From Entomortierella parvispora E1425 (Eukaryota; Fungi; Mortierellomycota): DNA of 64,000 bases. The position numbers were made by a program, and so were the translations under genes. Under the pieces are notes generated by a model. The model searched no databases. It had not been told where the DNA came from and worked only from the letters and a program-made list of their open reading frames with translations. Where the stretch lies: contig BQFW01000015.1 in assembly GCA_020891255.1 (NCBI GenBank), positions 372,001 through 436,000 on the forward strand, written 5' to 3'. Below, in pieces: positions 37,898 through 63,280 of the stretch (positions within the stretch are counted from its first letter, which is position 1; every line of letters starts with the position of its first letter).

Positions 37898-39792
37898 TTA
37901 TGCGGACACCTTGACAGGTCTTGTCGTCGTCATCGTCGTCTTGAGCAGTGGCTTTTCTTCTTGCACCTGCGTGGCATCTTCCTCTTCTTGCTCCTTCTCC
38001 TCCTCTTCCTCCTCCTCGGGCTCCTCCTCACTTCGCACATCCTCGCTGTTTTCGCCCTTGAGCACCTTCATCACCACGCGAGCAATCATGGCCAGCCAGA
38101 ACAACAACAACGCATACAGCGCACAGAGCAAGATTTGGAATCCTGTCAACACCCTCGTCGTAAGATAATAGCCCTCGGCCGGGTTCCACTCGTTCGTAAA
38201 CTTGGGTGCCTCCACAAAGCAGGACCAGATGATGATGCCATAGTAATAGTGTCGAGACATGATCCAGGTCACCACAAAGAACACAAACCCGACATCCGCA
38301 GTCTTGTCCTTGTGCATGTACTTGAGCATCTTGCACACCGCCAACACGATGTCCGAGAAATCCATCGCACAGAGCACGGCATGCCCAACCGATGTCAAGT
38401 TGAAGGAATACGAGAACCCAATGAGGAGACAGGTCACGATATGATGGATCATAAACTCCAAAAAGTCCTTGCGCCGCTTCTCAATGCCCAGGATCGCCAA
38501 CAGGAGCTGTTGCAGCCAGAACGCAAACTGGATCAGATAGTACCATTTCATTGTCCCGCTCAACAACGTCTTTGGGTAATCGTGCCAGTAGAAAGAGGTG
38601 TCGGACCAGTACTGGGAATGGTACAATAAGCACTATTTTGCATCAAGAGGGAGGGGGAAACCGTTAGAGGCTGGGGGATCTTCACAGCTATCCCTATTCA
38701 ACGCACATTGAATAGAGTAGAGGGAGCAGATAATAGAAGAAAAAAAGTGCGGCAGTCGGAACAGGAATGCAAGATGAGCAACGGAAAAAAGGTACTTACC
38801 ATGCCAAACGTCCACATGCAGCCGTCGTAAATCACCAACCAGCCCTGCTCAGCAAATCTCAACAGCTTTCCCTCGCGTGCATGCTGTTCCTTCTTGAGCT
38901 TCATTCTCGCCTCCCTTTGTGATTTCTCCGATGGGGCCTTCTTGCCTACACCAGTGGACGACAATGTGGGTGAGGAGACGGAAGCGGGAGAAGAGGCCGC
39001 GGCCTTCTTGGGAGGTTTGCCCCCGACTCCGAACGCTTGACCCAGGGGGATGAGCAGATAGGTCATGGCCGCCTCTCGGACAGCAGTCCAGATCATAACC
39101 CAGACGAGAACCATGTATAAATCATCCCAGCCCTTGCCGTACAGCACCTCTGTCTCGCCCGTCTTTGGATCCTTCACAATTTGTTGATACTGCAACGCCA
39201 GCGCTCGTGAGGACCAGGCTTTGTTCGGATCATAGGCGCCTGACTTTGGCGTCCATTTCTTGACCATGGCATGACCGCCCAGCGTCACATTGGTCCAGCT
39301 CAGAGGCAAGCGCTCCCACAGTGGAGGCGGGATCAACGCATTCATGCTGCCAATCCAGTCGACCGAGTGTCCATCTCGGGCTTCTTTCGAGACAATGAGC
39401 ATATGGGAGGCCACGACGGCCAAGATGACGGAGCAGGAGAGGACTAGTTGATGTTGGATTAGGAACGAGGCCCAGGTCTGATCGGGGACGGGTCGCTCCG
39501 TGGGGATCAAGAATCCATCGACGTTGTACTTGTAAATGGGCTGCGTAGGGTCGACCTCGTGGCCGTGATCGACCTCAATATAACGGGGGGCGCCCTCTGG
39601 CGGGGAGGGAGAGCGTCCTCTGGTGGGGTCGTGGTGATGATGCCTCCTGTGGTGGTAGTGGTGGGGCTGTCCGGTCTCACTGTCGATACTTGCTTTGCGA
39701 CGGAACGAGTTGGCTCGATCGCGTGCTGTCATGGGAGGGCGCAGGGAGGGCGAAGACGACGAGCCCAGGCCCGCGTCTTGAAGATTGGCCAT
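37898..39792 (-). CDS. LAG1: Ceramide synthase (TLC domain, Lag1/Lac1 family), exons 39792-38800 and 38632-37898
   Basis: YGKGWDDLY, RFAEQGWLVIY, YYLIQFAFWLQQ, Lag1 motif RRKDFLEFMIHHIVTCLLIGFSY...DFSDIVLAVCKMLKY. The LAG1 versus LAC1 subclade is not resolved. Confidence 0.9.
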
Positions 39793-43709: not shown

Positions 43710-45000
43710 CTACTCCTGGAACAGCGCTGCAGCAATCTCCGGGTTCTTTTGGTGACCTTTTTCAACGGCTTTTCTCATCTTCACAATCGCCTCCGCTGTC
43801 CAGTCAAACTTGATATCAGGAGTCGCAAACGACAACGGTCCATCCACCACCTGGTCCTTCAAATGCTTTCTCTCTTCCGATGACTTGTCGACCAGTCCAC
43901 CCTCTGATAAGGTGTCATTCAGCAGCCCACCAATATCCCCTTGATAAAAATGACTCGGGTTGCGAGAATGCCACTCTGAGGACAATCGAATGGAAAACTC
44001 GTAAAAAAAATCTTGTTTTATCTTGTACGCTGCGTTGCGATCCATGTAGTTATCGCTCTCGTACCCTCCCAAATCATCCTTCAACTGGGCCACAGTGACG
44101 TGCGAGACACCTTCGCAGGTCAGGAGAGATCTCACCTTCTCGTGAAGAGACTGGGTCTGTTGCATGAACCCAATCTCCTCCAGTCCCTGTTGCACAGGGT
44201 CCGGCGCAAACTTGACGACGTACGGAAAGAGGGCCATCGCTTTTTCCAATCGTCGAAGACGAAACTTGTATAGAAGCTGAGGCTCGTTCTTTTCAGTCCA
44301 CGTTCTCGGGCGAATATTTGATTGCATCTTGCTTAAGCGCATCCTCTCCTTTCGGCGCATTTTGTACTCAAGCTCAAGGGGTGAGGAAGGGTTCTCTTTC
44401 TCTCTTCGCTCCTCCTCCTCCTCTTCCTCCTGGTCCATCTTCTTTTCCTCCTCAAGCTCTTCATCGGTCAGCTCTACTGCAAAGTGAAAAGTCTCGTCCA
44501 TCATCACAGATTTGGCAAGAGGTCCAATGACAGGTTCGAACAGGTCGAACGATCTCTTGGTCAGGAAGATCTCCGAGGCATACTCCCGAAGAGTATCGAT
44601 CAGGTCGAGGGTCGAGCCCAGGATGCTGGCGCAATGGTCAGAGGCCACCTTTTCCGAAAATTGGCGGAAAGCCACTCGTTGCTGTTGAAAGAGTTGCTCT
44701 TCGTGGGGATTGCCAGGAATAATATTACGAAACACGGATTTCAGAGGACCTGTCGTCACCTCTCGCTCTACAATAAAGGACGTGAAGACCGATGAAGAGT
44801 TGAATGCGAAAATACAGGACAAATGGTTATTTTTGTTGCTCGGTTTTTCTTTCAGATAAGAGTCTTGGTCCAATTGTTCACAAACCGGCGTAGTAATTGC
44901 CACAACACAGGTCTCTCATAGGCATTGGAGCAGCAAGAGCTGAGGTCGCGCACACGAGTGCCAACGAGAGAAGAAGGACCAGGTTCTTGAAAAGGGGCAT
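43710..45000 (-). CDS. Secreted array protein copy A (signal exon + phase-1 intron + ~355 aa exon)
   Basis: Exon 1 MPLFKNLVLLLSLALVCATSALAAPMPMRDLCCGNYYA G|gtttgt; acceptor ttgtag|AG CGA GAG gives E-REVTTGP; open to ALFQE*. Confidence 0.82.
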
Positions 45001-45429
45001 CGTGTATTCTTCAAGCGTATTCTTTTGACCGTTATCCAAGTAACTTTGAGTTGATGAAGGGAGGCGCGGTTGACACAGGGAGAGGAATGAAGATGAATGG
45101 CATGAGGTATTTCTCCCATTGCTCTCTTGAATGGGGCGCGCGACATGTTGTCATCTGACCCTCTTTTTTTTTTTTTCTTTCTTTCTTTGGAAAGCGCCCC
45201 TTGTCGCGTCGCACAGTCTGTTTGCTTTCACGACTGGAGAGAAATCAACAAAGGTACTTTGAGAATAGGAGAAAACACTGTAGAGGAGTCGGGAGGCGAC
45301 ACAATGGTCATCTGCAAGACCAGGCTCAACGGTGCGGCAAAAAGAGTACTGCCGCTCGACACATTTGAATAGTCAACATCATGGAGTACATTCTCGTAGA
45401 AATTGGATAGGTGGGTCCTTATCTTCGGC

Positions 45430-46642
45430 CTATTCCTGGAACAGGAGGGCGGCAAGTTGTAGGTTCTTTTGATAACTTTTGAATGTAGCCCTGTATAGTT
45501 GCACCAACGCTTCCAAGGTCCACGAAAACTTGACTTCTGGTACCGAAAACAATGGCGTATATTCAATGGCCCGGTCACTTAGCTGCAGTCGATCTTCTGG
45601 GGGCGTTATGACTGGTGTCCAATCATTGAGAATGTTTCTCGCTTGGTCGCTCACCAGCACTTCATATGCAGAATGAAAAGATCTAACAGCCTTGTGTGCC
45701 GCATACCGATCCATGTAATTGTCGATCTCATATTCCATCCTGTCCTTCCATTGAACAGCTGTTAAGTGTGGTATACCCTCACAGGACAAAAGAGACCTGG
45801 TATCGTTCCGCAGGGCCTTGGTTTGTTGAATGAACCCACTGTCTTCCAACGCTTGCCGAACTGGATGAGGTGCAAACTTGAGCATGTAAGGGAGGATAGC
45901 CATATGTTTTTCCAAAATCCGGAGACGAAACTTGAACAGGAGCTGAGGGTCATTCTCCTCTGTCCAAGAGTACAAGCGTCGAACATTGTCATCCTTGTAT
46001 GCCTATCTTCTTTCTCGCGTTCTTTTTCTTCTGGAGAAAGAAAAGGTGGATAAGGGGTTCGTCTCTCCTCCTCCTCCTCGTCCACAATGTCCTCCCTTTT
46101 TCTTCCATCCCCAATCTCTACCTCCGATAAGAACTCCAAAAAGTTGGTTGTCTCGGCCATCGACAAAGATCCGACGAGAGGTTCAAGAACAAGCCTTAAG
46201 AAATCATACAATTCCTTATTCTGCAAGCAATCGTGGACAGAATCTCGTACAGGGTCGAGATGGTCAAGGGTGGATTTCAGGATGGTTGCGCAATGACTAG
46301 AGACCTCTTTTTCCAAAAAAACGATGGAACGCGGCCCTTTCCTGCTGCCAGCGTTGCTCTTTATGGTCACTCCATCTAAGAGTGCTACGATGTTTGAAAG
46401 GGCCGATTAATTCATTCAAGTCTACAGGAGGGAGCGTGAAAGGGGAAGCCAAGGGAAGAGAAAGATTGAAAGCATTGGTAGGAAAGGCGGTCAATATTGG
46501 TTGTCAATTGCTGCCTCCAAGAGAATATGGATAAGAGAATATGTGATAGAAGATGGTCAATACCAATGATGGTGGCGGTGGGTGCAGTTGGGGAAAAGAT
46601 CGCCAATGAAAATAGCAGAGCGGGGTTCTTGAGAAGGAGCAT
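45430..46642 (-). pseudogene. Secreted array protein copy B with two frameshifts
   Basis: Exon 1 MLLLKNPALLFSLAIF; exon 2 DLNELIGP...WQQERAAFHRF. Extra base in the T/A run at 46315-46321 and a second shift near 45975-46000. The remainder aligns to the family through LLFQE*. Confidence 0.8.
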
Positions 46643-47049
46643 CGCGCTTGCACGCGTGAACACTTTTTATAGAAGTGCAAATCACTTTGAGAGGGATGAA
46701 GAAACAGAATGGTGAACATGAGGCTTTTTCATTCTCACCCATTGGGGCGCGGGCGATCGCCATCTCTCCCATTTCTTCATTGGTCCATAGTCGCACAAAC
46801 GGGCTCGCTGTGCCTTGCTTCATTTTATGGTTGCAAGCCAATGTCGCGGGTTTACGTGTCCGTCCTGCGCTCTCTTCTCTCTCCGAACAACTGCTTTTCG
46901 AGGCGCACTGAGGCAACAACGTTCAACTTTGTTGGAATTGAAAACTCGACCTTGTGGAGAGGTCAAGAACATTGATCAGCCCCTTTTTTGAGGCATAAAT
47001 AATATCATTTAAAAATGTTAGACTAATATTTATTACAATATTTTATGGG

Positions 47050-47130
47050 TGATCATATTTTGGTGCACATCAAAAAATCGATCTTTGGTGCAAAAAAAAA
47101 TATCTAAGCCACCGAAGTTTGGTGCACAAT
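47050..47130. repeat. Three TTTGGTGCA direct repeats in an AT-rich block; possible transposon subterminal region
   Basis: tttggtgca at ~47059, ~47084 and ~47118 after an AT-rich stretch (46995-47060). No matching opposite end found. Confidence 0.35.
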
Positions 47131-50100
47131 TTCGACGTGTCATCGGTCGCGTCTCTCGGTTCTATGTGTCTGAGCCTATGTGAATGAACAAGGACTCGAT
47201 CCTGATGTTAGGGTATCATCCTTCAAGACCGCGATCAAGGTCATGGAGAAACTCCACAAGACTTTTTCTCGCGCAGCTCGCGTAAATCTCGAAGCCATGG
47301 ACTATGTTGAAGCGTTCTGCGATAGAAAGCCTGCCAACATCAGCACGGTGAAAAGGTCTACGTGCTCGATCAAAATGAGCACCCCCCCCCCCCACACACA
47401 CACACACCCCTCTGAGGCGCGACATGTGTGCTCATGGCGGTCTCATGAAATGAAGCATGCTCGCATGAACCCATGCTAGCGGCTGATTGTCAATGACGAT
47501 GGCCAAAAGGAGAAACGAGTGGAGAGTGCATCTATGTCAGCCATGGGAGGGCGAGTGGCTGCACAGATCGGATCCCAGCGAGGAGCGAAAGAAAGATAAA
47601 GTGGAGACGTTCCTCACGAGCTCCACAACAGTCTTGACTCTGTCTCCATTCTGCATGACAACACGCATTAGCCCAGAGAGTGAGAGAATCGCACGCCAAC
47701 ATGTCAGTCCACCATTGATATGGCTGGTTGCGTTGATGCGACGGTCATGCAGCACAGGGATATCCACACCGAGGCCGTGGGCTCGTGGAATGAACCTGGC
47801 ACGCGTTGTTGACAATTAAGGAGCGCTGGACCCTTGCACCCTGCTTGCATGGTCATCATAAAAAGCCGTTTTTTTTCTCTCCTTCCTTTTCCTTCCTTTC
47901 CTTCTTTCTTCACCCATCCCACCTTCCACTTCCCAACTACCTACCACACATCTTCACTTATACTTTAAGTTCTCTGCTTGCACATACTGTCTGTTACGTC
48001 TTGGAGATCCTTGTCTCTGTACTTACCTTGTTCTCGCGATACTCGGTTCGTTCACTGCCATGCTCCAAGACTCGGCAAGAAAGCCTTCAGGGAAGCACCA
48101 AAGGTAACTTCACGCTCCCCTCTCTACCCTACCCCGGACAACACCCTTCTCTGTCACAACCTTTGGTCGGTAGCTCTTCCTTTGAGCGTGGCGGGAAGTG
48201 TGGGCTGGTCCCTTGTTGAAAGTCAACGGCTCTGGGGTGATGCCCAAGCCCAGTGATCTTCTACTCGGGGCCAGTTTAGATCTTTGAGGATAATACCCAA
48301 GTCTTTGTCTGGTTGAGAGTCGCAAGGCCCAAGTAGATGTGTGAGTATCTACTTTGACCTGAAGTTCACCGGTGTGAGTTGAAGAGAGCTCCTGTCCTTT
48401 TTTGTTGTGCTTTTTTGAGGACGAGCTCTCTTCTCTCCAATACAAAGTAAGGGTGACAGCTCTGTGTGGCTGACCGTGGACTTTTTGAGGATTCCCTTTT
48501 CACATGAGGGAGTATGAGGACTTCATTAGTGCGGTCAGAAGGTATGTCTTGAGGGAAGAGTTTGTATTGTCGGCGAGTTCTTTCACGGCCACTGCGTAGC
48601 GGCGCTGAAACGAGCATCCTCGTATCCCAGCCGAGCTGACGAGAGGAGTGCGGTGTGCTAGTTGCCAGTGTAGTATGTTCCTCTCGAAGGGCTGCTCACT
48701 TTATTATTGAGGCTTCGGACCCGATCACCACTGCCGATTGTCAGAAGAGTTACCTGAACAAGGACGTAAACCTCCCTCCTTGGTCGATGATACAAATGAC
48801 CTATGCACTATTGACATGAAGGCGCTACGTCCGCCGGATCTCTACTTGACTTAGGGGAAGGTCGGGTATAAGGTGGCAAGGTTGTCGGCGAGATCAGTTC
48901 TCTGAGAAGGATACCGGTCAAACGGTTCCAGAAGGAGCCTCGTAAGTTCATGAAGGAGATGAATCGTCTGAACAAGACACGTCCTTGATGTTCCTCACGA
49001 TGATGGGTTGCCACCCCACATTTTTTGGGATGCGAAAGGTCTGCCGCCTGCTCGTTGGCGCATCCTGCACAGCTTCGGTTCTTTGATCAAAAGAACTGGG
49101 GTTGACTGAGAGCAGACCACTAGATAGAAATGACAAATACAATAAACATACAGACAGTTGAACAATGAAACTACTCTTGGTCCCAAAGAATGCACTCGCT
49201 GTCAATGAGCAACAACAATGGCGACATGAAGGTCAATGTTCATGTGGGATCAGCTCCATTTCGCACGCACGCATAAGCTGAAAAGCCATTTTCTCACGCC
49301 ATGTGAAAGCTGAAATGTTGAAAGAATGGCAAGAGTGCATTGCATTACCTCGTTCTGAATGAACATTCCCCCTCGAGGTTGCCATGCATCCATTGTCTGT
49401 CCCAGGAACGGTTCATGTGCCTTCCATTCCGAAACAAGCGACTTCGCCCAAACGAGTGTGCTCAGACCGCGTGGCTCTCCGCCCAGGGTGTGGGGTTAGA
49501 ACTGATTCTTGATCCGCACGTTTATTTGCATTAAGGTGATGAGTGTGTTCCCTCTTTTGAACGAAGGCGGGGTTCGGCGGTGATGAGCCGTTAAAAAGAG
49601 GCGGCTGCAGTGGGGAAGAGATTTTGCTATCAGAGCTATGAATCTGAGTCCCATCTGTGTCTCGCAGCATCATCTCCCTGCAAGCATCTTGATTGTCTTT
49701 CACTTCTTGGATGCAACCTTCGATCGCAACGCTCTTGCTGGAGTACCTGTGAATTCGCCCTCAAAGAAGAGAGGGTTTCTTAAAGAGCAGTATCATGTTT
49801 TGCTCATCCAGTGAATGATTGATTGGTTCGAGAGGACTGATAAAGACAAGATGAACAAGGCTTCTTTGCTAGTGAACGCGAGTCTCTGGGGTCCAGCGGA
49901 CTTAATGTTCATCCATGTCTTCTTCAGTTCCACGCACTTCCAAAGGGGAGGTAGAGCAGTCCACACCTTCTCTTGGTTGTCCATATCTTCCAAGACTAAG
50001 AGATTTTAAAACACACGCCGGCTCTCCAGGCATTACGCTGAGGCTCGTCGGCGAGGAAGACTGACGGCAAGATTGTCGTCAACACCAGTTTTTTCAATGT

Positions 50101-50578
50101 GAAGCGTCGGCACCGAATCCAGGGCCTCTTCATCTCCACAAAAAAAAAAAAAAAAGGAAGGGGAGGGGTTTAGAACAATGAGAAGAAAAAGTGTTTAAGT
50201 TCACAGCTCGACTGATCATCTACTCGAATCAATAACATCCAGACGTGAATCTCCTCGTGCAGGGGCAGTTGCTGTAGTCAGGACAGGACTTGGATTCTCG
50301 AAGGGTGTTGTCGCTTGAACGCAACTTTTTTTTTTTTTTTTTTTTTTTTTTTGCAGGCGAGTCGTACATGGAAGTATCTGCTATGCATTTTTAGGGCCAT
50401 GAACGCTTCCTTCCTCTAAAATGGCGAGTTGATCGAGGGTAAATGTGATGTGACGAATAAGGACCTGTTCATCTCCAAACAACCGTCCACCTTTAACCGC
50501 ATTCCTTTATTTCTCTTCCTAACTACGATGGTATTGTTCTACACGAGAAGGGCAGGGAGTTATGGTTGGATGGGTCGC

Positions 50579-51908
50579 CTATTCTTGGAACATCAGAGCA
50601 GCAATCTCTGGGTTCAATTTGCGATCGTCATTGCCGTCAGTGGCGTTTGACAGTTGAACGATCGCTTCCCAGGTCCACACAAATTCAGTTTCAGGAGTTT
50701 TGAACAACACCGTATCTTCCGCACTTTGATCTTTCAATTGCTGTCTGTTGTCTAACCCCCCCTTGACTAGTTCGTGGTCCACAGCGCGGGTCACGTTCAG
50801 GATTTCACAGTTCTTTCCCCAGGTGGGTATCAAGGGTACCATGGGTGCCGCGTGGGAGTGCATTGACTGAAGGAGTAATCGTGCGCGGTAGTGGATATAA
50901 TAGAGCGAAATTGCAGTGGTTGCAGAAGACCGGTCCATGTGGTTGTCGCTCCCACGCTCCCCCATCTCGTCCTTCAACTGGGCCACAGTGATGTGGGGGA
51001 CACCTTCACAGGTCAAGAGGGATCTGACCTGCTCCCTCAGAGCCTTGGTCTGTTGAACAAACCCACTCTCTTCCAGTTCCTGTCGCACAGGGTCTGGTGC
51101 AAATCTTAGCACGTATGGGAAGACAGCCATCGTCTTTTCCAACAGTCGAAGGCGAAACTTGAGCAGAAGCTGAGGCTCGTTCTCCTCTGTCCACGATCTC
51201 ATTCGAGTATTCGATTGCCTGTTAAAACCCCGGATCCGTTCTTCAAGCTCCTTTTCTCTAGGGGAAAGATATAAGGCCGGGTTTCTTCTCTGTTCCTCTT
51301 CTTCGTCTTCGTCTCTCTTCTTTTCTTCTTGAAGCTCCTCTTCAGTCAATTCGACAGAATAGTGATAGTCATCGGCCATTTTCAAGCTCGGGGTCAGCGG
51401 CGCAAGGACGGGGTCCATGAAATCGAACGATTCCTTGGCCTGGAGTCGGTCATGGACAGAATCTCGAATGTTGTCGAGGAGGTCGAGCGTGGATCCAAGG
51501 ACACCAGTGCAATGAGCGGAGACCATTTTTTCCGAAAACTGACGGAACGCGACCCTTTCCTGTTGCCAGATTTCTTCCTGCTTGTCCTTTTGTTCAGGAC
51601 AACGGTGACTTGGGTCAACCCATCTTGATTGGACAGGACCTGTCAATGCGTCCACGCCTACATGAAAGGGAGGGAAGAGTCAATGAAGTGAGTTCATAAG
51701 CGCTACAGGCCCCGCTGTATCCATTTCATTTGAAACGAAAATGTCGAGATGAAGAGAGATAACGTCGGGTGGGATATGTAGTTCAATGGGGCTACAAACC
51801 TGAATCGTCAGCAACATCCAGGCTTGGATAAACTATCAATGTAAGGACAGCAGTTGCACAAAGGATAGCCAGCGAGATGTGCAAAACTGGATTTTGGAAG
51901 GGTGCCAT
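50579..51908 (-). CDS. Secreted array protein copy C
   Basis: Exon 1 MAPFQNPVLHISLAILCATAVLTLIVYPSLDVADDS G|gtttgt; acceptor catgtag|GC GTG gives G-VDALTGP; 358 aa open exon ending LMFQE*. Confidence 0.85.
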
Positions 51909-53272
51909 TGCTTAAAGATCAGACAAGATGAATTGAAAGGGAAGTACGAGGTTAGAAGAAAAGAAGAAAAAAAAAAGCGATGACAATGACTTGCATGGAG
52001 TTCTCCCATGAATGCTGGCAAATGGGCGTTTACGATCTCTCCATCTGCTGTGTTCTCTTTGAGTTGCACAGGCTCATTTCTACCATAGAACAAAACTGGG
52101 GCATGGCTCTCAAATCGATGCGAAGTCAAAAGCACAGGCAGTGCGAGGAAGGACAACTTTGGCTGGGAATACGGTCGCCGGGTAAGATGCCTGCTACTCG
52201 GAATTCAGTGAGCCAATCTAGCGGCTCAAACGGTCTGCGATTGAAACTGCTCCTCAACAAGTCAAGATATCGGCTGTCACTAACAACGATTTGGCCTTCA
52301 AGTAGCGGAGAACAACCCTTCAAGGTACCAAGGATCACTTCAATGATCTCGGAGTTGGTTTGCCCTTTGTGTAACATGAACTTGTGGAAAGGAAAAAAAA
52401 AGCCCAATCAAAAAAAGTGTTCCTCTGAATCTCGATCGAAGGAAGTGGGCTGTAGTGCACTTCGCATCTGGGATTGCTTGATGCCCTTGCCCTGATGGTC
52501 CATCGCAAAAGCTGATGGCTTCTTGTCGTTGTGGGTGTTTTCCAAAGGAAGAGGACTCAATTTTGGAGTCGATTTCCACTTTTCACTCAGGAAGAGAGCG
52601 GAACACAGGGTAAACAGACATTCATCGATGATCATGTACTCCTCGCGCTTGACAACTACCCTTTGATTATAATGAGGCGATTGCAGTGCAGGGTGACAGG
52701 CCTGTTGTGAGACGATTCTCCGAGCAAGATCTCTCGCGTGTTTTTATTGCCCTCTGATCTTCCGCCACCTTTCCTCTCCCTCTCATCTCTTTCACTGCCT
52801 CTTCTCTTCTTGGCCTCCCTCATCTTCACTGCTTCTCCTTTCATTGAATTCAATGCCTAGAAATAGAGCTAGTACGGGTGCTACCCTTTTCCAGGTCAAT
52901 GCTCTGTCACCTGTTCTCTGTTTGGCAGCGCTGACGAACAGGGGACAGCTGTTCATGTCGCAAACTGGCTGTACATGTACAACCTTCTGATTTTTGATCC
53001 AGTCTTCAGTGATGCCTTCTGTTTGATTAAATTTGACGCAGGAAAACTGTAGGTCTTTTCTGACCGCGTCATTGTTGCAGGTCTGGTAGTCTGGGAATGC
53101 ACGCTGGGAAGGTATTTAATTAAACTGGCAAACAAATGCCCCAGAAGCTTGACCCTGCAAGAAGGGTTACTGAGAAACGACAAAACTCAAGAAATCGACC
53201 GACATTTTTTTTTACTTCTCACTAAAATAGAATAGGTGCAAAGAGCTATGCGCAAGTTCACTAGCCGATTGT

Positions 53273-54585
53273 TTACTGGAACAATACGGCAGCAAGCTCC
53301 GGATTATCCAGGTAGCCATGTCGAGTGGCCTTCCAAAGTTGCACGATGGCCTCCCAAGTCCACTCAAACTTGACGTCGGGAGTCGCGAACAACAACGTAT
53401 CTTCTTCCTTCTGGACCTTCAATTGCTGTTTATCCTCCAGTCGCTTTTCGGCTGACACACGGTCGACCACCTGAGTGATGTTCCGAGGCCGGGCAGCAGG
53501 CCGCATAGATCCCATACGAGAGTTCATCTCATGATTGAGTAATCTAGAGTAGTAATCAGAGGCAAAGTCTTCGGTGGCCCTTCGTGCCGCCTCCCGATCG
53601 ATGAAGTTGTCGCTATCATATCTTCCCAGCTCTTCGTCCAGTTGAGCCAGAGTTACGTGCGAGGCACCTTCACAGGTCAAGAGAGACCTTGCCTCCTCCC
53701 GCAGGACTTTGGTACGTTGAATGAACCCACTCTCTTCCAGCTCTTGACGGACGGGGTCCGATGCAAAGCGAAGGAGATATGGGATGAGGGCCATATTCTT
53801 TTCCAATAAGCGAAGACGATACTTGAATAAAAGCCAAGGCTCGCTCTTCTCTGTCCAATATATAGGACGAGTGTACGACATCCCGCTTTCTCGCAGGTCT
53901 GCAGTTCCATTCAACGGAGATGCAGGTGAAGAGGGAAAGGGACCTCTTACCTCTTTCATCTCTTCCTCCTTGGACCGTCTCTTTTCCTCCTCAATCTCCT
54001 CTTCAGTCATTTTCACTCTTAGGTAGAAAGTATCCATCAAGCTAAATGGCCATTGAAGGTGGCCAATGATAGGTTCCAGGAGATCATTTGATTCCTTGAC
54101 CAGCAGACGATCGTGTACATGGTCTCGAACAAAATCGAGATGGTCGAGGGTGGGTCCCAGGAGGTCGAAGCAATGGCTAGAAACTGCCTTTTCCGAGAAT
54201 TGACGGAACGCCGCCCTTTCTCGCTGCCATCTTCGCTCTCTGTAGTCCTTCGAGGAAGACCGGCCGCGACTTGGATCAAGCCATCTCGATGGAAGAGGGC
54301 CTGTCTTTGCCTCCAAGTCTATATGAAATACGTAAGGGAGGAGAGAAAATGGATTTGTTAAGACCATGCAGTGATCGCTTTCAATCAATTCAGGGCAGGG
54401 GCAGTTGGGGAGGGGTTTGGGGCAGGAAGTTCAATTGACCACTCACCAGAGTTGTCAAGAGTAAAAAGTAAACCTGGTACCGGTGTGGGGACTGATGCAT
54501 CCCCCACTGGTGTCGGAACGGGGTTTGCAGTTGCGAAAATGACTCCCAGCGAAAGGAGCAGCACTGTATTCTTGAGAAGTGTCAT
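53273..54585 (-). CDS. Secreted array protein copy D
   Basis: Exon 1 MTLLKNTVLLLSLGVIFATANPVPTPVGDASVPTPVP G|gtttac; acceptor catatag|AC TTG gives D-LEAKTGP; ends AVLFQ*. Confidence 0.85.
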
Positions 54586-55236
54586 CACGAGCGGGGACAC
54601 TTTTTTTTTGTCTGTAGTAAACGTTGAATGAAGCGAAATGGAGAGGAGAGGATGGAGCAATGACAATGGTCAGCAGCATGTCCTCTTCCATTCTCGCTCG
54701 CCAATGGGGGTAAACCCGTCCCCAAATGCCGCGCCCTTTTGCTCAAAGTTCAGCCCTCATTGTTGACACGACAAAGACACGGTTAAATTGCCACCATTGC
54801 GTGTATGCAACAGAAAAGACAAAGGATTTGAGCGCACCAAGCGACCAGTCATGTTCGCAATGGCGTCATCTTTTCTTTGTGCTGTACGAACTGCGGGATG
54901 CAACAAAGAAACAAAAATGTCGGTCAGTCGAAGCCGATAGAACTACTGCGACCGATGGGCCAAATATCAAAAAAACCCAAATAGCCATAGAAGCGTGAAA
55001 AAAAAGGCGTCTTTGAACCTGTGTCGCCAAGAGTAGGAAGTGAAAATGTTGGCTCTGCCTCAGGAGTAAGGACTGCGGTGCGAAGAGTAGTCAGTTAGGT
55101 CAATAACGCGCTTATGATCAAAAAGAGAACTTCCGCCTTTATTTTTTTATTTTTTTATAACAAGGCCATAAAGACCTCGTACTATACGATGTTGGTGCAA
55201 GGATCCTCGGGTGAGTGGGCAGTTTGGGGATTTGAA

Positions 55237-56553
55237 TTACTCCTTGAACAAGAGGGCAATCACCTCTGGCTTCATACGGTAATCATTCTCGTGTCCAGTA
55301 GCCTTCCACAGTCGCACGATCGCCTCCCAAGTCCACGCAAACTGGACTTCAGGAGTTTTGAACACCACTTGACCTTCCACGTCCTGATCCTTCAATTGCT
55401 GTTTATCGTCCGACATGTTCTTGGCGGGCGCGAGGTCCTCAGTGCAGGTCGTGTTACTGAGTTCACAGCTCTCTTCCCAAGAATATGGCCTGGATGCCCG
55501 GCTAAAAGTCGAAACCTCCATGAACAATCGCAAGTGGTAATCGCTGTGGAAAATGTTAATCGACTGGCTTGCAGCAGACCGATCCATGAACCTGTCACTC
55601 TCGAAATCTCCATCGTACGCGTCCTTCAGTTGAGCCACAGTGACGTGCTGTACGCCCTCACAGGTCAAGAGAGACCTCACCTCCTCCTGTAAGGCCCCAG
55701 TCTTTTGAACGAACCCACTCTCCTCCAGCTCTTGTCGAACGGGATCGGGTGCTAGCCCGAGAACAAACGGGAAAACAGCCATCATCTTCTCCAAGTGTCG
55801 GAGGCGATACCGGAGCAACAGCTGAGGTTCATTCTCCTCCGTCCACGATACTGAACGAGTTCTGGATTGCCTCTCAAAATTCCAGATCATCTCTCGATAT
55901 TTCTTTTCTTCTGGGGAAAGAGACGGGAATGAGGTTCTTCTCTCCTCCTCTTGTTCTTCTTTGTCCTTTCTCCTCTTTTCTTCAAGCTCCTCATCGGACA
56001 GTTCCTCCTCAAAGTTGAACTCTTCGTTCATACGCAAAGGACCTTTCAGCGTTGCGAGGACGGGCTCCAGAAGATCGAACGATTCCTTGACCTCTAGGTG
56101 GTCGTGCACAAAGTCTCGAACACTGTCCAGGAGGTCGAGGGTGGATCCCAGGACACTGGAGCAATGAGTGGAGACGACCCTTTCCGAAAATTGACGGAAC
56201 GCGACTCTTTCTTGTTGCCATTCTCGTTCCTCTCTCTCTTTCCATTCAGGAGGGAGAAGGCCTCGGTCTCTCCAGTTTGAACTGATAGGACCTGTTAATG
56301 CCTCCATGTCTACGGGGGATAGAAAGAAGTAGAGGAAAAGTTAATTAGGTACATTCCATGTTCCTTGCCATTCCCAAAAAAAAGTCAAGGTATGAGGAAA
56401 TAAAACTTGGATATGATATTCATTTGGCCACGAACCTGCCTCGGAGATAAATTTTGGAACCACTGGATCTACCACAGGCGTGGGGGCAGCGGTTGCAGTT
56501 GTGCAAAGGATTGCCAACGAGATGAGCAGAACCGGATTCTTGAGGAGTGTCAT
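55237..56553 (-). CDS. Secreted array protein copy E
   Basis: Exon 1 MTLLKNPVLLISLAILCTTATAAPTPVVDPVVPKFISEA G|gttcgt; acceptor ccgtag|AC ATG gives D-MEALTGP; ends LLFKE*. Confidence 0.87.
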
Positions 56554-57462
56554 TGTGTCTGTTTTAGATGCTGCGGGTAAGTGGGAATGGAGTGAAATGT
56601 GTCCAGGTAAAGAAGAATAGAAAAGTCATGAGTCCCAGAGCAGCGGAACGCTCTATTTATATGTCCTTTGACCAAACTGCTGGGGGCTGGGTATAACTCT
56701 CGAACAAAATTTCAAGAGCCACTGTGCAACAATCCTCGGTGTACCTTTTTTTTTTTTTTTTTTTTTTGAGGAATCCAACAACCCAAGAGCCACGCAACAG
56801 CCTGCCTCCTTTCTTCGAGTCCAAGAGAATCACTTTCTTGATTCTTTGAGTTGATTGACCCTTCTTCGTTTTTGTTTAACTTGACTCTCGCTGGAAAGCA
56901 GAAAAAAGCAGATTTCCAGAGAGAATCAAAAAGTGATTCTCTTGGGCAGGAGGGCGGCTAATATGTCACAGTCGACCCGGAAGAGGATCCAATTCAGGGG
57001 CATGCAGTCTGTGAAAAATATCGATTGTCCAGGATTCCAAATGAGAATTGGCGCTCACCAACCATCTCTTTATCTGCTTTGCCTTCTGAAGGTCCTTTAT
57101 CGTTGCACAAAAGTCGAGGAAGAGAAAAACGGTCGTCTGTGAGGCACCTGCATGCATCAGGTTTAATTCATGACACGACAATTCCCAAACTTGTACAGTT
57201 AAATGCAAATGAGCTTCAAAAATTAGCAAGCAACATAACTGGAAGAAGGATTTGGGAACACATGTGACTCTGGAACGAATGGCCCGAGAAAGGTAGTCCA
57301 AGCATGCTAGTGAGCAGGTTGCAGAGGGCACAATGCTGATGAGGTCAGAACTTGCACTTTGCACAGTCTGATATGACGAAGTCCAAAAAAAAAAATAACT
57401 CTGAATCAGGTACAGCCTTGAGTATTTCGAGGCAGGGAGCAATAGGCAGGATCGCTAGTCTT

Positions 57463-58080
57463 CTAGTTATCAAACAACACTGCAGCACGTTCTGGGTTCT
57501 CTTGGTAACCATCTCGAGTAGCCTTCCACAATAAAAGGATCGCCTCCCAGGTCCACTCAAACTTGACGTCGGGGGTCTCAAACAACAATGCATCCTCTTC
57601 CACCTGGACCTTCAACTGGTATCTATCTTCCAAGGGCTTCGTGTCTGATATACGGTCGGCTATCCGAGTGAAGTTCCGGGGTCCCACAGCGGGCTGGATA
57701 GATATCATGCGAAAGTTCTTCTCATGATTGAACAATCTTAAATAATACTCGTTTGAAAACCCCTCAGTAGCTCTTCGAGCCGCCTTCTGGTTCATGAAGC
57801 TGTCGCTCTCATGCCCTCCTAACTCGTCCTTCAGCTGTGCCAAAGTGAGGTGCGAGGCACCCTCACAGCTCAGAAGCAACTGTGTCACTCCCCCGCAAGG
57901 CCTCGGTTTGCTGCACAAACCCACTCTTCCCCAACTCATGTCAGACAGCATCCGGTGCGAATCGGAGCACATACGGGAACATAGCCATATTTTTCTCCAA
58001 CAACCAAAGTTGGTACTTGAACGACAGCTCAGGGCGTGTCTTCTCTGTCCATTTTCTCATACGAGTATGAGACCTGCTCC
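57463..58080 (-). pseudogene. Secreted array protein copy F, 5'-truncated with an internal stop and a frameshift
   Basis: RMRKWTEKTRPELSFKYQLWLLEKNMAMFPYVLRFAPDAV*HELGKSGFVQQT, a shift at ~57895, then LLSCEG...FEWTWEAILLLWKAT...AVLFDN*. Confidence 0.82.
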
Positions 58081-58397
58081 TCGAAGGTATGATATCGTTT
58101 CCAGAGGGTTGCTTGAGCAGCAGTTACGACACATGTTCTGCAAAAGGCATGAACCCAACTGGGTCGGGTGGTTGCTCGACGGGTACTTGGACCTGCTTGT
58201 ATGAAAATGATGGCGACCTACCCGCTTTCACCAATCAAATTAATGGCTGCATGGTTAATAAGGATGGCTGCAAGCAATTTCCTAAGACTGAATAACTCAG
58301 TGCTTCTCTCGGCAAGGACGCATTTGTGTTGCCGTCTTTTTTTTTTTTTTTTTTTTTTTCCTGATCTATCGAAATTCAGCCTTACTTTAATCAAGTT

Positions 58398-59764
58398 TCA
58401 ATGCTGGAACAACGCGACAGCAACCTCTGAGCTCTCCTTGTAACCTTGTCGAGTGGCCCTCCACAGCCTCACAACTGCTTCTGCTGTCCATATATACTTG
58501 ATTTCAGGTGAAAAAGGCTGGTTTTCTTCTACCTGATCTATTTTTTGCCTACTATCTTGCCTAGCCCACTGAAACTTGATATCCGGTGCTGACAACCCAG
58601 CCAATGTGTTCTTCAATTGCTCTATTCCTTCTCGATAACCGACCGACCAGCGACTCTCCACTTGAGTAGTGTTCACAGTCTTCTGAAATATAGACACTGC
58701 ATGCTCATCGGGCATGCGGGCACCCATCCGTTGAAAGAGTAACCGAGTGTGGAAGCTACGGGAAAAGTCGTCCATAGCCTTGCGCGCCGCATTGTGATCC
58801 ATGAAATCGTCGGTCTCACGCCCTCCTAGCTCATCTTTCAACGTCGCCATGGTTACATGTGTAACACCCTCGCAAGTCAAGAGGGACCTCACGTTTGTTC
58901 GCAAGTTCTTTGTTTGCTGGACGAACCCTCTCTCTTCCAGTTCTTGTCGGACTGGATCCGGTACAAACTCGAGCACGTACTGAAAGGCTGCTAGCCTTTT
59001 TTCCACGTTGCGCAGACGGTACTTGAACAAGAGTTGAGGCTCCTTCTCCTCCGTCCACGATGTCAAAAGTCGTTTCGATTCCAATTCATGTAGCCGAAGT
59101 GCTCTTTGGCGCGTTCTTTCCACCGTAGAAAGCGATGGGGTTTTTTCTTCCTCCTTCTCTTCCTCCTCGACCATTTTCTTCTCTTGTTCAATTTCCTCTG
59201 GAGTCAGTTCTACGTAATAGTAAAAGGTCTCGGTCATATCCAGCGAATTGGTAAGGGCGTCTAGGACAGGATTCAAAAGCAGGAAGGCTTCCCTGGTCTC
59301 CCTGCTGTCGCGAATAGCTTTCCCAACTTTGTCGAGGCCATCAAGGGTGGGCTGTAGGATGCTGGCGCAACGGGCAGAGACCACTCGTTCTGAAAAAGGT
59401 CGGAATGCCTCTCTTTTAAGTTGCAAGGCCCGTAGTTGCTCCTTGTCTTCAGAAGTTCGGAGATTTGGGTCAAACCACATAATCTTGAGAGGGCCAGTCA
59501 AGTCCCCCAGCAGGAAATCTACACAGCAGCCAGCAAAGAAGATGATAGCTCATGGGTGAGACTTGCTCTGAACCACAAAAATGGATCGTCAATGGTATTA
59601 CCTCCTGGGAACTCTGACTGTGCCCTAGGTTGGCGGAAAGCATTTTGGGTGGTCCAGTTGTGGACTGTGTGAAGCGACCTCAGGATCCACGCCCAGGAGA
59701 AGACTGCAGCCGCGCAGAGGAGCGCTAGCAAGACGATCAGAATTGATTTCCTCAAGAGAGACAT
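58398..59764 (-). CDS. Secreted array protein copy G (divergent, longer exon 1)
   Basis: Exon 1 MSLLRKSILIVLLALLCAAAVFS...QSEFPG G|gtaata; acceptor gtgtag|AT TTC gives D-FLLGDLTGP; ends ALFQH*. Confidence 0.82.
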
Positions 59765-60351
59765 CGTTTTTCAGGTCACTTGAATGGCGTCTTTGTTGTC
59801 GCGGGTGAATGAGGCAGATGAGAGGAGGAGGGGATGAATGATGAATAGCATTTAGTTTTGCTCATGCCTCCATGTTGCTTTGCCATTTCGTTTTAAAAGA
59901 GCGGTGTTGCACAAACAGCCCTCGATCACTAACGGTGCTCAATTGCTTAGCCCTTTCGACGACTCGATCGCAGAGACGACACAATGACGGAGGACACGTA
60001 GGAATAGAGCGTGTGAGAAGCTGCTACCGGCTCTTCAATTGCTGCCCGTCTTTCATAGGGACTAGAGACTTGAACAATACTGTTCTATTGAATTTGTCCA
60101 TGGACCTAGCTGCGTTGAAGTATCTTCAAAAAGCTGATGCACACCCAACAGCCGATCAGAAACGGACCATCTACACCCAACGCTGACCATCGAGTACAGC
60201 CGCTGTGGGAAGCAACCTTCCACTAGAGGCTGGGTCTCTTGACCTCACACCAAGCCAACGTTGTCTAACAATTGGTATAACAATGTGACTGATTTATTCA
60301 ATTCTGCTTCAAAGCATGGCCCTGAACATTGGACATGAGTAGATGATAGCT

Positions 60352-61696
60352 TCATGCTTCAGCTTCCTCTTGGAACATGAGGGCAGTTACTTCTGGATTC
60401 CTACGGCGACCGTGGCCGGTATCAGTGGCCTTCCACAGTCCCACGATCGCCTCCCAAGTCCACACAAACTGAACCTCAGGAGTTTTGAACAGCACTGGAT
60501 CTTCCACGACCTGATCCTTCAATTGCTGTCTATTATTTTCGGGCGTTCTCTCGGCCGACGTAGAGTTCACAGCGTGGGTCGTGTTCACGAGTCCACAGTT
60601 GTTTCCCCAACCATTTAGAGTGGGTGCTTTGCGAGAAACTGCGACCTCCCTAAATAATCGCATGCGATAATCTGTGTTGTAACTGTGCAAAGAATGCCTC
60701 GCGGCAGACCGATCCATGTATCTGTCGCTCTCATAGCCTTCCTGGCACTTGTCCTTCAGTTGAGCCACAGTGACGTGCTGTACGCCTTCACAGGTCAAGA
60801 GAGACCTCACCTCCTCCCGTAAGGCCCTGGTCTTCTGAACGAACCCACTCTCCTCCAGCTCTTGTCGAACGGGATCGGGTGCGAACTTGAGCACGTACGG
60901 AAAGACAGCCATCGTCTTTTCCAACCGTCGAAGGCGATACCGGAGCAAGAGCTCAGGTTTGTACTCCTCTGTCCACGATCTGGTACGAGTGTTGGATTCG
61001 CTGTTTCGACGCCACTTCCTTTCTCGATGTCTCTTTTTCCACTGGGGAAGCGTTGTGGACGGGTTTCTTCTCTCCTCCTCTTGTTCCTCTTTGTCCTTTT
61101 GCCTCTCCTCTTTAAGCTCCTCGTCGGTCAACTCGACTTCAAAGTGGAAATGATCATTCATCTTCAGAGGCCAGATCAACGCAGCAAGGACTGGTTCAAG
61201 AAGATTGAACGACTCTTCGACCTGGAGGCGGTCGTGGACGTAATCCCGGATGCTGTCAAGGAGGCCAAGAGTAGTTTCTAGGGTGCTCGTGCAGTGGCTG
61301 GAGACCACTTTTTCCGAGAATTGACGGAATGCGATCCTTTCCTTTTGCCTAGTCCGTTCCATCTCATCCCTTAGTTCAGGATTATGGCCACCCAGATCCA
61401 TCCATCCGGACCGGATTGGGCCCATCAATGTCTCCATGTCTACATGAAAATGGAGGTAAAAAAAAGTTGACAAGGCAGAGATGTTTAGGTGCTTTATCAT
61501 GCTCCATTGCAGGGCTGACAAAAGTTATAGGAACAAAGGGAAACATTTGGGTATGTGCTTCAAACGATCACGTACCGGAGTCGGAGATGTAGGTAGTTGA
61601 GGTCATTGGATTGATCACAGGTGTAGGAGCAGCAAGGGCGGCTGTGCAGAGGATCGCCAGCGAGAGGAGCATAGCTGGATTCTTGAGAGGGGCCAT
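60352..61696 (-). CDS. Secreted array protein copy H
   Basis: Exon 1 MAPLKNPAMLLSLAILCTAALAAPTPVINPMTSTTYISDS G|gtacgt; acceptor catgtag|AC ATG gives D-METLMGP; ends LMFQEEAEA*. Confidence 0.87.
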
Positions 61697-61925
61697 ATAT
61701 CTTGATTTTTTTTATTGTTGTGTCGTTGGGGAATGGAAGGGCAGGACAAGGTTCGAGGAGAACAATACCATGGCCCGCAAGGGATATATACCAATGTCCT
61801 AAACTACTGCGCCTCTGTTTTTCCAGAACTTGAACAAGAGCACGAGCCAAGAGCAGATGTATCAGCCCTCTGCTCTTTTTTTCTTTTAGAAAAATGAGAG
61901 CAGGGTAGATATGCTAGGCATCAAC

Positions 61926-63280
61926 TTAGTCCTGGAACATGAGGGCAATCACTTCTGGATTCATGCGATCTTCTCCATCGCTTTCAGTGGCCATCCACAG
62001 TCGAACGATCGCCTCCCAGGTCCACACAAACTGGACTTCAGAGGTTTTGAACAGCAGTTGATCTTCTGCGACTTGTTCTTTCAGGTGCTGTCTGCCGTCC
62101 GACGCTTTCTTGGCCAGCGTGTGGTCGCTAGCGCTGGTCGTGTTCCGGAGGCCATCGCTCTTTCCCCAGGCATGTGGCGTGGCTACCCTGCGAGAAGTGG
62201 CCACCTTCCTCATTAAGCGAGTGTAGTAATATCTGCTGAAATTGGTAATAGATGAGATGGCAGCATCCCGATCCTTGTAGCTGTCGCTCTCAAATCTTCC
62301 CCACTTTTCCTCTAGCTGGGCCCTAGAGACATGCGAGACACCTTCACAGGTCAGAAGGGACCTCACCTCCTCCCGCAGAGCCTTGGTCTGTTGAACAAAC
62401 CCATTCTCTTCCAGTGCCTGTCGCACAAGATCAGGTGCAAACTTGAGCACATACGGAAGGACAGCCATCATCTTTTCCAATCGTCGAAGGCGGTACCTGA
62501 ACAAGAGTTGAGGTTCGCTCTCCTCTGTCCAGGAGATTCTATAGCTATTCGATTCCCAATCTCGCGATTTCTTTTCTTTGGGGGAACGAGATGGCGATGG
62601 GCTGCCTTTTTTCTCCTCCTCCTCCTCCTCCTCCTCCTCCTCCTCCTCCTCCTCCTCCTCCTGTTCCTCCTTGGCCCTTTTCCTCTCTTCTTCAACCTCC
62701 TTTTCAGTCAAGTAAACAGTCAGGTGGTACTCTTCCTTCATACTCAAAGGCTGGGTCAGCGGCACAAGGATAGGTTCCAGAAGATCGAACGACTCCTTGA
62801 CCTCTAGACGGTCGTGAACAAAGTCTCGAACGTTGTCCAGGAGGTCAAGGGTGGATCCCATTGTCCAGGAGGTCAAGGGTGGATCCCAAGAGACTTGAGC
62901 AGTCAGTGGAGACGACCCGTTCCGAAAATTGACGGAACGCGACCCTCTCTTGCTGCCAGGTTCGCTCCTGGCTATCTTTCCATTCGGCACCAAGGCGATT
63001 GGGGTCGAACCATTGAGATCGAACTGGGCCTGTCAGTGCCTCCACCTCCGGGTCTAAATGAAAGACGCGAGACGGAAGTGAAAGGGACAAAGCTGTTTAG
63101 GTACTATGACTCGCTCCCTTTCAATAAAACGTGAGAATGTTATCCGATAGACCACATGCCTGACTTGGAGACAAAGTCTTCTAAAGACGATGGATCCACC
63201 ACTGATGTGGGGACAGCGGTTACGGCTGTGCAAAGAATAGCCAGTGAGAGAAACACAATTGGATTCTTGAGAACGGTCAT
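61926..63280 (-). pseudogene. Secreted array protein copy I, frame broken by a 28 bp tandem duplication; GC-AG intron
   Basis: Exon 1 MTVLKNPIVFLSLAILCTAVTAVPTSVVDPSSLEDFVSKS G|gcatgt; exon 2 D-PEVEALTGP. TTGTCCAGGAGGTCAAGGGTGGATCCCA is duplicated at 62833-62860 and 62861-62888. Confidence 0.8.
62590..62662. repeat. (CTC)n/(GAG)n microsatellite encoding the poly-Glu linker of array copy I
   Basis: Uninterrupted ctcctcctc run giving about 20 consecutive Glu codons on the minus strand. Confidence 0.9.

What the first reader, a model, noticed from the sequence alone, without database searches (positions are those of the whole stretch)
43710..63280. ~20 kb tandem array of at least nine paralogs of an unrecognised secreted protein family, hidden by a conserved intron
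The sequence shows nine same-strand copies between a multi-exon hypothetical gene and ICP55. In all eight copies with a 5' end, a short exon encoding a signal peptide (consensus MxLLKNPVLLxSLAILCxxAxAAPTP) joins a ~350 aa exon through a phase-1 intron at the same position. The ORF track lists these as separate small and large ORFs, so automatic annotation would miss the secretion signal. Conserved blocks are TGP..W..ERxAFRQFSE.VVS.HC..LG.TLD.LD, WTEExEPQLL..RLR.LEK.MA..PYVL.FAPDPVRQELEESGFVQQT..LR..VRSLLTCEGV.H and F.WTWEAIV.LW.AT...PE..A..FQE. I recognise no known domain. Inference: local birth-and-death expansion (six intact, three disrupted copies) of a secreted family is typical of effectors or antagonism toxins, which would suit a soil or endophytic Mortierellaceae fungus.
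Basis: partly seen in the sequence, partly recalled or inferred. Interest (0 to 1): 0.88.

Follow-up and report, generated by a model that had tools for sequence, protein, structure and literature searches.

The report
Tandem array of orphan secretory proteins
A 20-kb stretch of the soil fungus Entomortierella parvispora carries nine old tandem copies (six intact, three broken) of a gene found only in Mortierella-type fungi, encoding an export-signal-bearing helical protein of unknown function; the array is real, but it is already in the public annotation and shows no sign of a toxin or an arms race.

Summary
Nine minus-strand paralogs lie at 43,710-63,280: six intact and three broken. A tenth, intact copy lies on another contig. 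All eight copies with a 5' end have a short signal-peptide exon joined through a phase-1 GT/GC-AG intron to a ~350-codon exon.

The intron is not hidden. The window is E. parvispora E1425, and GenBank model EMPS_10802 is identical to my spliced model. The same intron is annotated in Gryganskiella and Linnemannia orthologs.

The family is restricted to Mortierellaceae: 13 clusters among 1.8 billion representative proteins. It has no Pfam domain and no PDB sequence match. Two AlphaFold models (pTM 0.73 and 0.74) give an all-alpha bundle with no structural relative above noise.

Members share:
- an N-terminal hydrophobic signal with A-x-A before Pro;
- no other membrane segment;
- two invariant Cys;
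- a conserved N-x-T sequon;
- net negative charge.

The duplicates are old (dS 0.7-2.2) and under purifying selection (dN/dS 0.19-0.35). Metagenomic orthologs pair with individual copies. Tandem arrays also occur in three other sources.

Best reading: a lineage-specific secretory-pathway glycoprotein family of unknown role. The effector or toxin reading is unsupported but not excluded. No RNA run could be listed, so splicing was not tested with reads.

The parts
43710..45000 (-). Copy c1, intact (EMPS_10799; the GenBank model starts at an internal Met of exon 1 and lacks the signal). Exon 1 44886-45000, intron 44768-44885, exon 2 43710-44767.
45430..46642 (-). Copy c2, pseudogene. Signal exon 46564-46642, intron 46422-46563, exon 2 broken by frameshifts near 46315-46319 and 45987-46074.
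47429..49539 (.). Dispersed ~2.1-kb repeat with no long ORF, inserted in the array between c2 and c3. At least 10 other copies in the genome at 84-96% identity. Not a family member.
50579..51908 (-). Copy c3, intact (EMPS_10800). Exon 1 51800-51908, intron 51658-51799, exon 2 50579-51657.
53273..54585 (-). Copy c4, intact. Exon 1 54447-54585, intron 54319-54446, exon 2 53273-54318.
55237..56553 (-). Copy c5, intact (EMPS_10802, 396 aa, identical to my spliced model). Exon 1 56436-56553, intron 56310-56435, exon 2 55237-56309.
57469..58078 (-). Copy c6, a 3' fragment covering profile positions 161-361 only. It has a frameshift near 57876-57944 and no 5' half or signal exon.
58398..59764 (-). 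Copy c7, intact and the most divergent. Exon 1 59602-59764, intron 59519-59601, exon 2 58398-59518. It has a long N-terminal hydrophobic stretch without the A-x-A-Pro motif.
60352..61696 (-). Copy c8, intact (EMPS_10804; the GenBank model starts at the second Met of exon 1). Exon 1 61576-61696, intron 61440-61575, exon 2 60352-61439.
61926..63280 (-). Copy c9, pseudogene. Exon 1 63160-63280, intron 63054-63159 with a GC donor, exon 2 frameshifted by a 28-nt tandem duplication at 62832-62887. It also has a long GAG (poly-Glu) run.

Best explanation
The locus is an old tandem array of a Mortierellaceae-restricted gene family. It has nine local copies (six functional, three decayed) plus one intact copy on another contig. 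Each gene has two exons. A short first exon encodes an N-terminal signal sequence, and a phase-1 intron that is ancestral to the family joins it to one large exon. Inferred mechanism: the nascent protein is translocated into the ER. In most members signal peptidase cleaves it after a small-x-small motif (ATA/ALA/AHA before Ala-Pro). It is N-glycosylated at the one conserved N-x-T sequon, which lies in a disordered loop. It folds into an acidic all-alpha bundle of about 370 residues, probably stapled by a single disulfide between the two invariant cysteines (C89 and C256 of EMPS_10802). With no ER-retention tail, GPI signal or second membrane segment, it most likely leaves the cell or stays at the hyphal surface, where it acts as a non-enzymatic binding or structural protein. 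Shown: the copies, the gene structure, the taxonomic restriction, the lack of any known domain or fold relative, the age of the duplicates and purifying selection. Inferred: cleavage, glycosylation, the disulfide, secretion and the extracellular role.
For: Copies and gene structure.
Identity with GenBank EMPS_10802 and the Mortierellaceae-only hit list.
Exhaustive profile search: only 13 clusters among 1.84 billion representatives.
Genome-wide count of nine plus one.
No Pfam domain and no PDB sequence match by single sequence or by profile.
Signal features: a K/R n-region, a hydrophobic core (8-residue Kyte-Doolittle maximum 2.4-3.8), A-x-A before Pro, and no later segment above 1.2 in a 19-residue window.
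The N-x-T sequon is at the same alignment position in nearly all members, two Cys are invariant, and net charge is -1 to -27.
Age and selection: pairwise dN/dS 0.19-0.35 with dS 0.7-2.2; helical core omega 0.08-0.35.
Tree: metagenomic orthologs pair with c4 and c7, so the duplications predate the species.
Tandem copies with signal exons occur on a metagenome contig (three copies), in Gryganskiella (three) and in L. elongata (two).
The same phase-1 intron is present in Gryganskiella and Linnemannia gene models.
Against: No transcript or protein evidence was obtained here, because no RNA run was listed. No signal-peptide predictor was available, so the signal call rests on my own hydropathy and -3/-1 heuristics. 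c3 and c7 have longer hydrophobic stretches (about 22 residues) without the A-x-A-Pro motif and could be uncleaved anchors. Many orthologs have a third Cys. The extracellular binding role is a default inference, not a result.
Confidence: 0.6

Rival explanations
1. One reading: the proteins are secreted effectors or antagonism toxins, and the array is the product of an arms race with bacteria, fungi, nematodes or plants.
For: Signal sequence, lineage restriction, tandem expansion with pseudogenes, and copy-number differences between species (10 here, 2-3 elsewhere). The disordered loop 313-354 approaches neutrality or more in one pair (omega 1.38, n = 42 codons).
Against: Whole-gene omega is 0.19-0.35 and the duplicates are old, with orthologs of single copies in another organism. 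That points to long-term retention rather than rapid turnover. The mature protein is large, Cys-poor and acidic. It has no hydrophobic or amphipathic insertion element. It resembles no known toxin or effector fold, and no alpha-pore-former appears in the top 50 for either model.
Confidence: 0.15
2. Another reader's idea (s1-193997): the proteins are Kex2-processed precursors that are cut in the acidic insert into two chains held together by the C89-C256 disulfide, a killer-toxin-like layout.
For: A dibasic [KR]R followed by x-Pro sits in one alignment column, at the end of the acidic helix and before a lower-confidence loop. It is present in 9 of 12 members of the Entomortierella-type clade. 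The two invariant Cys lie on either side of it.
Against: c4, c7 and one metagenomic member lack the site. The whole second clade (Podila, Linnemannia, Mortierella, Gryganskiella, E. chlamydospora) lacks both the acidic insert and the dibasic site, so processing cannot be the family's core mechanism. Dibasic pairs are expected by chance in a K/R/E-rich stretch. AF2 models the insert as a helix packed after a small hairpin. No sequence or fold similarity to killer toxins was found.
Confidence: 0.12
3. The N-terminal hydrophobic segment is an uncleaved signal anchor in some or all members, or the proteins stay in the ER, Golgi or vacuole. In that case they are luminal or membrane-tethered proteins of the endomembrane system and are not secreted.
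For: c3 and c7 have hydrophobic stretches of about 22 residues without the A-x-A-Pro motif. UniRef auto-names EMPS_10800 'Transmembrane protein'. The extreme C-terminus (L-F-Q-D/E) is conserved and could be a sorting or retention signal.
Against: Most members in both clades keep a short h-region followed by A-x-A before Ala-Pro, the classic signal-peptidase pattern. No H/KDEL tail is present.
Confidence: 0.12
4. The repeats are not a cellular gene family but relics of a transposon or virus, or chance ORFs.
For: A dispersed repeat sits inside the array.
Against: That repeat is unrelated to the copies. The copies have a conserved exon-intron structure, purifying selection, orthologs across six genera and only one copy outside the array. 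They have no transposon or viral Pfam hit.
Confidence: 0.01

Closest known systems
Lineage-specific secreted protein families in tandem arrays of fungal genomes (candidate-effector clusters in general)
   Same: Signal peptide, no known domain, restriction to one fungal family, local tandem duplication with pseudogenes, and copy number that varies between species.
   Different: The mature protein is large (~370 aa), has only 2-4 Cys, is acidic and helical, and is under purifying selection with old duplicates. Typical effector clusters hold small, Cys-rich, fast-evolving proteins. The organism is a saprotrophic soil fungus with no known host.
Ferritin-like / R2-like di-iron four-helix-bundle proteins (e.g. 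5uxg, 4mud, 2uw2)
Plant invertase / pectin-methylesterase inhibitor four-helix bundles (1rj1, 1x8z)
   Different: They are a third of the size with a different Cys pattern (two disulfides). They show no sequence similarity, and the match is within noise.
Kex2-processed two-chain yeast killer-toxin precursors
   Same: A signal peptide, a dibasic site between two Cys-bearing halves in most Entomortierella-type members, and an N-glycosylation site.
   Different: The dibasic site is absent from a quarter of that clade and from the whole other clade. No sequence or fold similarity was found, and processing is untested.

Membership tests
Sec-type cleavable signal peptide (secretory-pathway protein) | Positively charged n-region followed by a 7-15-residue hydrophobic h-region at the N-terminus | tested here: met
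   K/R occurs within the first 6 residues in most members. The 8-residue Kyte-Doolittle maximum is 2.4-3.8 in all 14 N-termini examined. This is my own heuristic, not SignalP.
Sec-type cleavable signal peptide (secretory-pathway protein) | Small uncharged residues at -3 and -1 of a cleavage site after the h-region | tested here: inconclusive
   A-x-A before Ala-Pro (ATA, ALA, AHA, VYA) is present in c1, c5, c8, the solo copy and the orthologs of the other genera. It is absent or unclear in c3, c4 and c7.
Sec-type cleavable signal peptide (secretory-pathway protein) | Call by a trained predictor, or experimental N-terminus or secretion | not testable with these tools
   No SignalP or DeepTMHMM here, and no proteomics.
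Ferritin-like di-iron carboxylate superfamily | Two E-x-x-H motifs plus two further carboxylates on the four core helices | tested here: not met
   H261 is the only invariant His, and no E-x-x-H is conserved.
Ferritin-like di-iron carboxylate superfamily | Significant structural match | tested here: inconclusive
Alpha-helical pore-forming toxins (ClyA/Hbl/Nhe/Cry6 type) | Hydrophobic beta-tongue or amphipathic helical hairpin for membrane insertion, plus fold match | tested here: not met
   The small hairpin (137-142 / 190-195) flanks a highly acidic insert. No 19-residue window in the mature part exceeds Kyte-Doolittle 1.2. No such toxin appears among the top 50 VIA rows of either model.
Kex2-processed two-chain killer-toxin-like precursors | Conserved dibasic cleavage site between the chains | tested here: not met
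   Present in 9 of 12 Entomortierella-type members and absent from all members of the other clade.
Kex2-processed two-chain killer-toxin-like precursors | Inter-chain disulfide | not testable with these tools
Small cysteine-rich fungal effectors | Mature size under about 300 aa with high Cys content | tested here: not met
   The mature proteins examined in full are about 340-400 aa with 2-4 Cys.

The most novel reading that the evidence does not exclude
The family is a new fold class of secreted interaction proteins specific to Mortierellaceae, either effectors or antagonism factors. Under this reading it was expanded and sub-functionalised in the Entomortierella lineage, and that clade gained an acidic insert with a Kex2 site that turns the protein into a disulfide-linked two-chain molecule acting on bacteria, arthropods, nematodes or roots.
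Probability: 0.1. Interest if true: 0.6.

Novelty: new member of a known kind. Interest (0 to 1): 0.3.

Why it matters
Mortierellaceae are among the commonest soil and root-associated fungi, and almost nothing is known of their secreted proteins. This is a clean, well-delimited orphan family with a confident predicted all-alpha structure and no recognisable relative. It would justify a new domain-of-unknown-function entry. It is also a tractable target for secretome and knockout work, because one locus holds nine of the ten copies. As it stands, it is an ordinary case of a lineage-specific secretory gene cluster that is already annotated as hypothetical proteins. It is not a hidden or surprising system.

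Tried and rejected
- RNA evidence: the look-up of sequencing runs on 53200-59190 listed no run and its cap is one. Read laying could therefore not be used, and splicing is supported only by sequence logic, the GenBank models and cross-genus conservation.
- Pfam on five copies gave only sub-threshold noise.
- PDB sequence searches with one protein and with the profile found nothing.
- Foldseek PDB, VIA-wide and ESM Atlas shape searches on two independent models found nothing above noise.
- The ESM Atlas feature search gave no usable hit.
- I looked for extra decayed copies in the 46.7-50.5 kb gap and found none. The gap holds a dispersed repeat.
- I looked for conserved synteny with the ICP55-like gene. 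L. elongata has a Peptidase_M24 gene about 7 kb from its two copies, but with a different architecture (Creatinase_N type). The Gryganskiella contig shows P450 and unknown neighbours. Conserved synteny is therefore not shown.
- Literature searches on E. parvispora and on Mortierella secretome or effector topics found no paper on this family.
- The transposon-protein and di-iron-enzyme readings were considered and rejected (see rivals and membership tests).
Full report
**Where the window comes from.** A protein search with the large exon of one copy returns a 100% identical GenBank protein, EMPS_10802 of Entomortierella parvispora. The window is contig 15, bases 372,001-436,000, of that 38.9-Mb assembly. 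The strain is E1425, a forest-soil Mortierellaceae fungus that hosts a Mycoavidus endobacterium. Its genome was annotated with AUGUSTUS using cDNA derived from RNA-seq (PMC8759367).

**The observation.** All long ORFs of the family lie on the minus strand. tblastn with one copy and a six-frame hmmsearch with a 26-sequence family profile both find nine copies and nothing more in the window.
- Six copies are intact: c1, c3, c4, c5, c7 and c8.
- c2 has at least two frameshifts.
- c6 is a frameshifted 3' fragment (profile positions 161-361) that begins just downstream of c7's stop.
- c9 is frameshifted by a 28-nt tandem duplication at 62832-62887.

Upstream of each of the eight copies that have a 5' end lies an ATG-initiated exon of 79-163 nt encoding M-x-L-L-K-N-P-hydrophobic-A-x-A-A-P-like peptides. 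I placed the splice sites by eye from the aligned upstream DNA and tested them by translation. Every exon 1 ends in phase 1. Introns are 83-142 nt, with GT donors (GC in c9) and AG acceptors, and the join restores one frame in each of the six intact copies.

Three sequence facts make the intron necessary rather than optional:
- Read-through from each ATG meets a stop inside the intron.
- Intron lengths are not multiples of three.
- In c1, c3 and c4 the first Met of the large exon lies 44-94 residues inside the conserved region, so the large exon cannot be a stand-alone eukaryotic CDS.

One correction concerns the ICP55-type gene (AMP_N plus Peptidase_M24). It lies beyond the window's end, not inside it.

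**Is the gene hidden?** No. EMPS_10802 (396 aa) is identical to my spliced c5 model. EMPS_10800 (c3) also carries the signal exon. EMPS_10804 (c8) carries it but starts at the second Met. Only EMPS_10799 (c1) starts at an internal Met of exon 1 and so misses the signal. The locus tags 10799-10804 fit six models for the six intact copies, although I saw only four of them directly. In GenBank models of Gryganskiella cystojenkinii and Linnemannia elongata the single intron is also phase 1. It sits at the homologous place, five or six residues before the conserved P/T-G-P/x-L-x-S-x-W motif. The intron is therefore ancestral to the family and is routinely found by eukaryotic gene callers. Only prokaryote-style ORF tracks split the gene.

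**Distribution.**
- The word-indexed search finds 30 proteins. The named ones all come from Mortierellaceae: Entomortierella, Podila, Linnemannia, Mortierella, Haplosporangium and Gryganskiella. A few come from unnamed metagenome contigs.
- A full HMMER profile scan of 1.84 billion cluster representatives finds only 13 clusters. The named ones are again all Mortierellaceae.
- Within the E. parvispora genome there are the nine array copies and one more intact copy on contig 7, with the same signal exon and phase-1 intron.
- Tandem arrays recur elsewhere. A metagenome contig has three copies, each with its own signal exon. Gryganskiella has three and L. elongata has two.

**Age and selection.** Nei-Gojobori estimates over the large exon of the seven intact E. 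parvispora genes give dS 0.73-2.16, at or near saturation. dN/dS is 0.19-0.35 for all 21 pairs. By region, the helical core has omega 0.08-0.35. The disordered loop 313-354 ranges from 0.18 to 1.38 on only about 40 codons.

In a maximum-likelihood tree the E. parvispora copies and the metagenomic sequences form a fully supported group (100/100). Within it, metagenomic sequences pair with c4 and with c7 (moderate support), and c5 pairs with c8 (also moderate support). The other genera, including E. chlamydospora, form a separate clade. The array is therefore old, predates the species, and has been kept under purifying selection while three copies decayed. That is birth-and-death evolution, but not a fast arms race at the level of the whole gene.

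**What the protein looks like.**
- No Pfam family reaches threshold.
- No PDB sequence matches, by single sequence or by profile.
- AlphaFold2 with the family alignment gives confident models for EMPS_10802 (pLDDT 76.5, pTM 0.73) and for a Podila ortholog (pTM 0.74).
- Both models show an all-alpha bundle of long helices with a small beta-hairpin. The signal region and one loop (313-354 in EMPS_10802) are disordered.
- The Entomortierella-type clade has a Glu/Lys-rich helical insert between the hairpin strands. The other clade has a short Ser-rich, low-confidence linker there.

**Evidence for the secretory pathway.**
- All complete N-termini in both clades have a basic residue near position 5 and a strongly hydrophobic core.
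- Most then have small-x-small followed by Ala-Pro (ATA/ALA in the array, AHA/VYA in other genera).
- No later segment approaches transmembrane hydrophobicity.
- A single N-x-T sequon is kept at the same alignment position in nearly every member although it lies in a variable, disordered loop. Such a sequon is functional only in a protein that enters the ER lumen.
- Two Cys are invariant. c4 and c7 have only these two, which fits one structural disulfide.
- There is no H/KDEL tail and no C-terminal hydrophobic GPI signal. The extreme C-terminus L-F-Q-D/E is conserved and unexplained.

These are inferences from sequence, because no predictor or proteomic data were available. c3 and c7 have longer hydrophobic stretches without the A-x-A-Pro motif, so they may be anchored rather than cleaved.

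**The Kex2 idea.** Another reader of the same stretch proposed Kex2-processed two-chain precursors. I found a dibasic [KR]R followed by x-Pro in one column at the end of the acidic insert in 9 of 12 Entomortierella-type members. It is missing in c4, c7 and one metagenomic member, and in the entire other clade, which lacks the insert altogether. Processing may be a clade-specific addition. It cannot be the family's basic mechanism, and it is untested.

**Verdict.** The array, the intron and the signal exon are real, and the family is uncharacterised and confined to Mortierellaceae. The most likely account is a secretory-pathway, N-glycosylated, disulfide-stapled acidic helical protein that acts outside the cell or at the hyphal surface by binding rather than catalysis. 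It is maintained in multiple old, diverged copies. The effector or toxin reading remains possible but has no positive support and some evidence against it.

Splicing and expression could not be checked with reads. This is a sound candidate for a new DUF-type family and for secretome work, but it is an ordinary kind of fungal gene cluster.

Noticed in passing
window 47429-49539: A ~2.1-kb dispersed repeat without long ORFs sits inside the array between c2 and c3. At least ten other copies at 84-96% identity lie on contigs 2, 6, 7, 9, 10, 13 and 15, including one 96% copy about 48 kb away on the same contig. It is probably a non-autonomous transposable element.
   Followed up: partly
G000 contig 7, L014:4205-5500 (minus strand): A tenth, intact family member outside the array. 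It has the same signal exon and phase-1 intron, and it keeps the C-G-L-R-N-V-T sequon context typical of the other genera.
   Followed up: partly
window 55237-56309 versus 60352-61439 (c5 versus c8): Synonymous divergence between c5 and c8 is much lower in the 3' half (dS 0.34-0.47 for residues 195-396) than in the 5' half (0.74 to above 3). This hints at partial gene conversion between these two copies. The numbers of codons are small.
   Followed up: no
window 62832-62887 and the GAG run in c9 (about 62,500-62,600): c9 is inactivated by a 28-nt tandem duplication (27/28 identical units). It also carries a run of Glu codons about 25 codons long in its acidic insert.
   Followed up: partly
L015 (ENA metagenome contig ERZ27249417 k141_896434), 2408-7948: Three tandem same-strand family members from an uncultured relative, each preceded by a signal exon. 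The prokaryotic gene caller read one intron through in frame, giving a 510-aa product.
   Followed up: partly
window 37898-39792 (minus strand): A two-piece ORF whose 3' part is a TLC (TRAM/LAG1/CLN8) domain. It is likely a ceramide-synthase-type gene with an intron, followed by a long low-complexity poly-T/CT-rich intergenic stretch at about 39.8-40.7 kb.
   Followed up: no
window 51800-51908 and 59602-59764 (exon 1 of c3 and c7): These two paralogs have hydrophobic N-terminal stretches of about 22 residues and lack the A-x-A-Ala-Pro motif that the others keep. They may be membrane-anchored variants of an otherwise secreted family.
   Followed up: no
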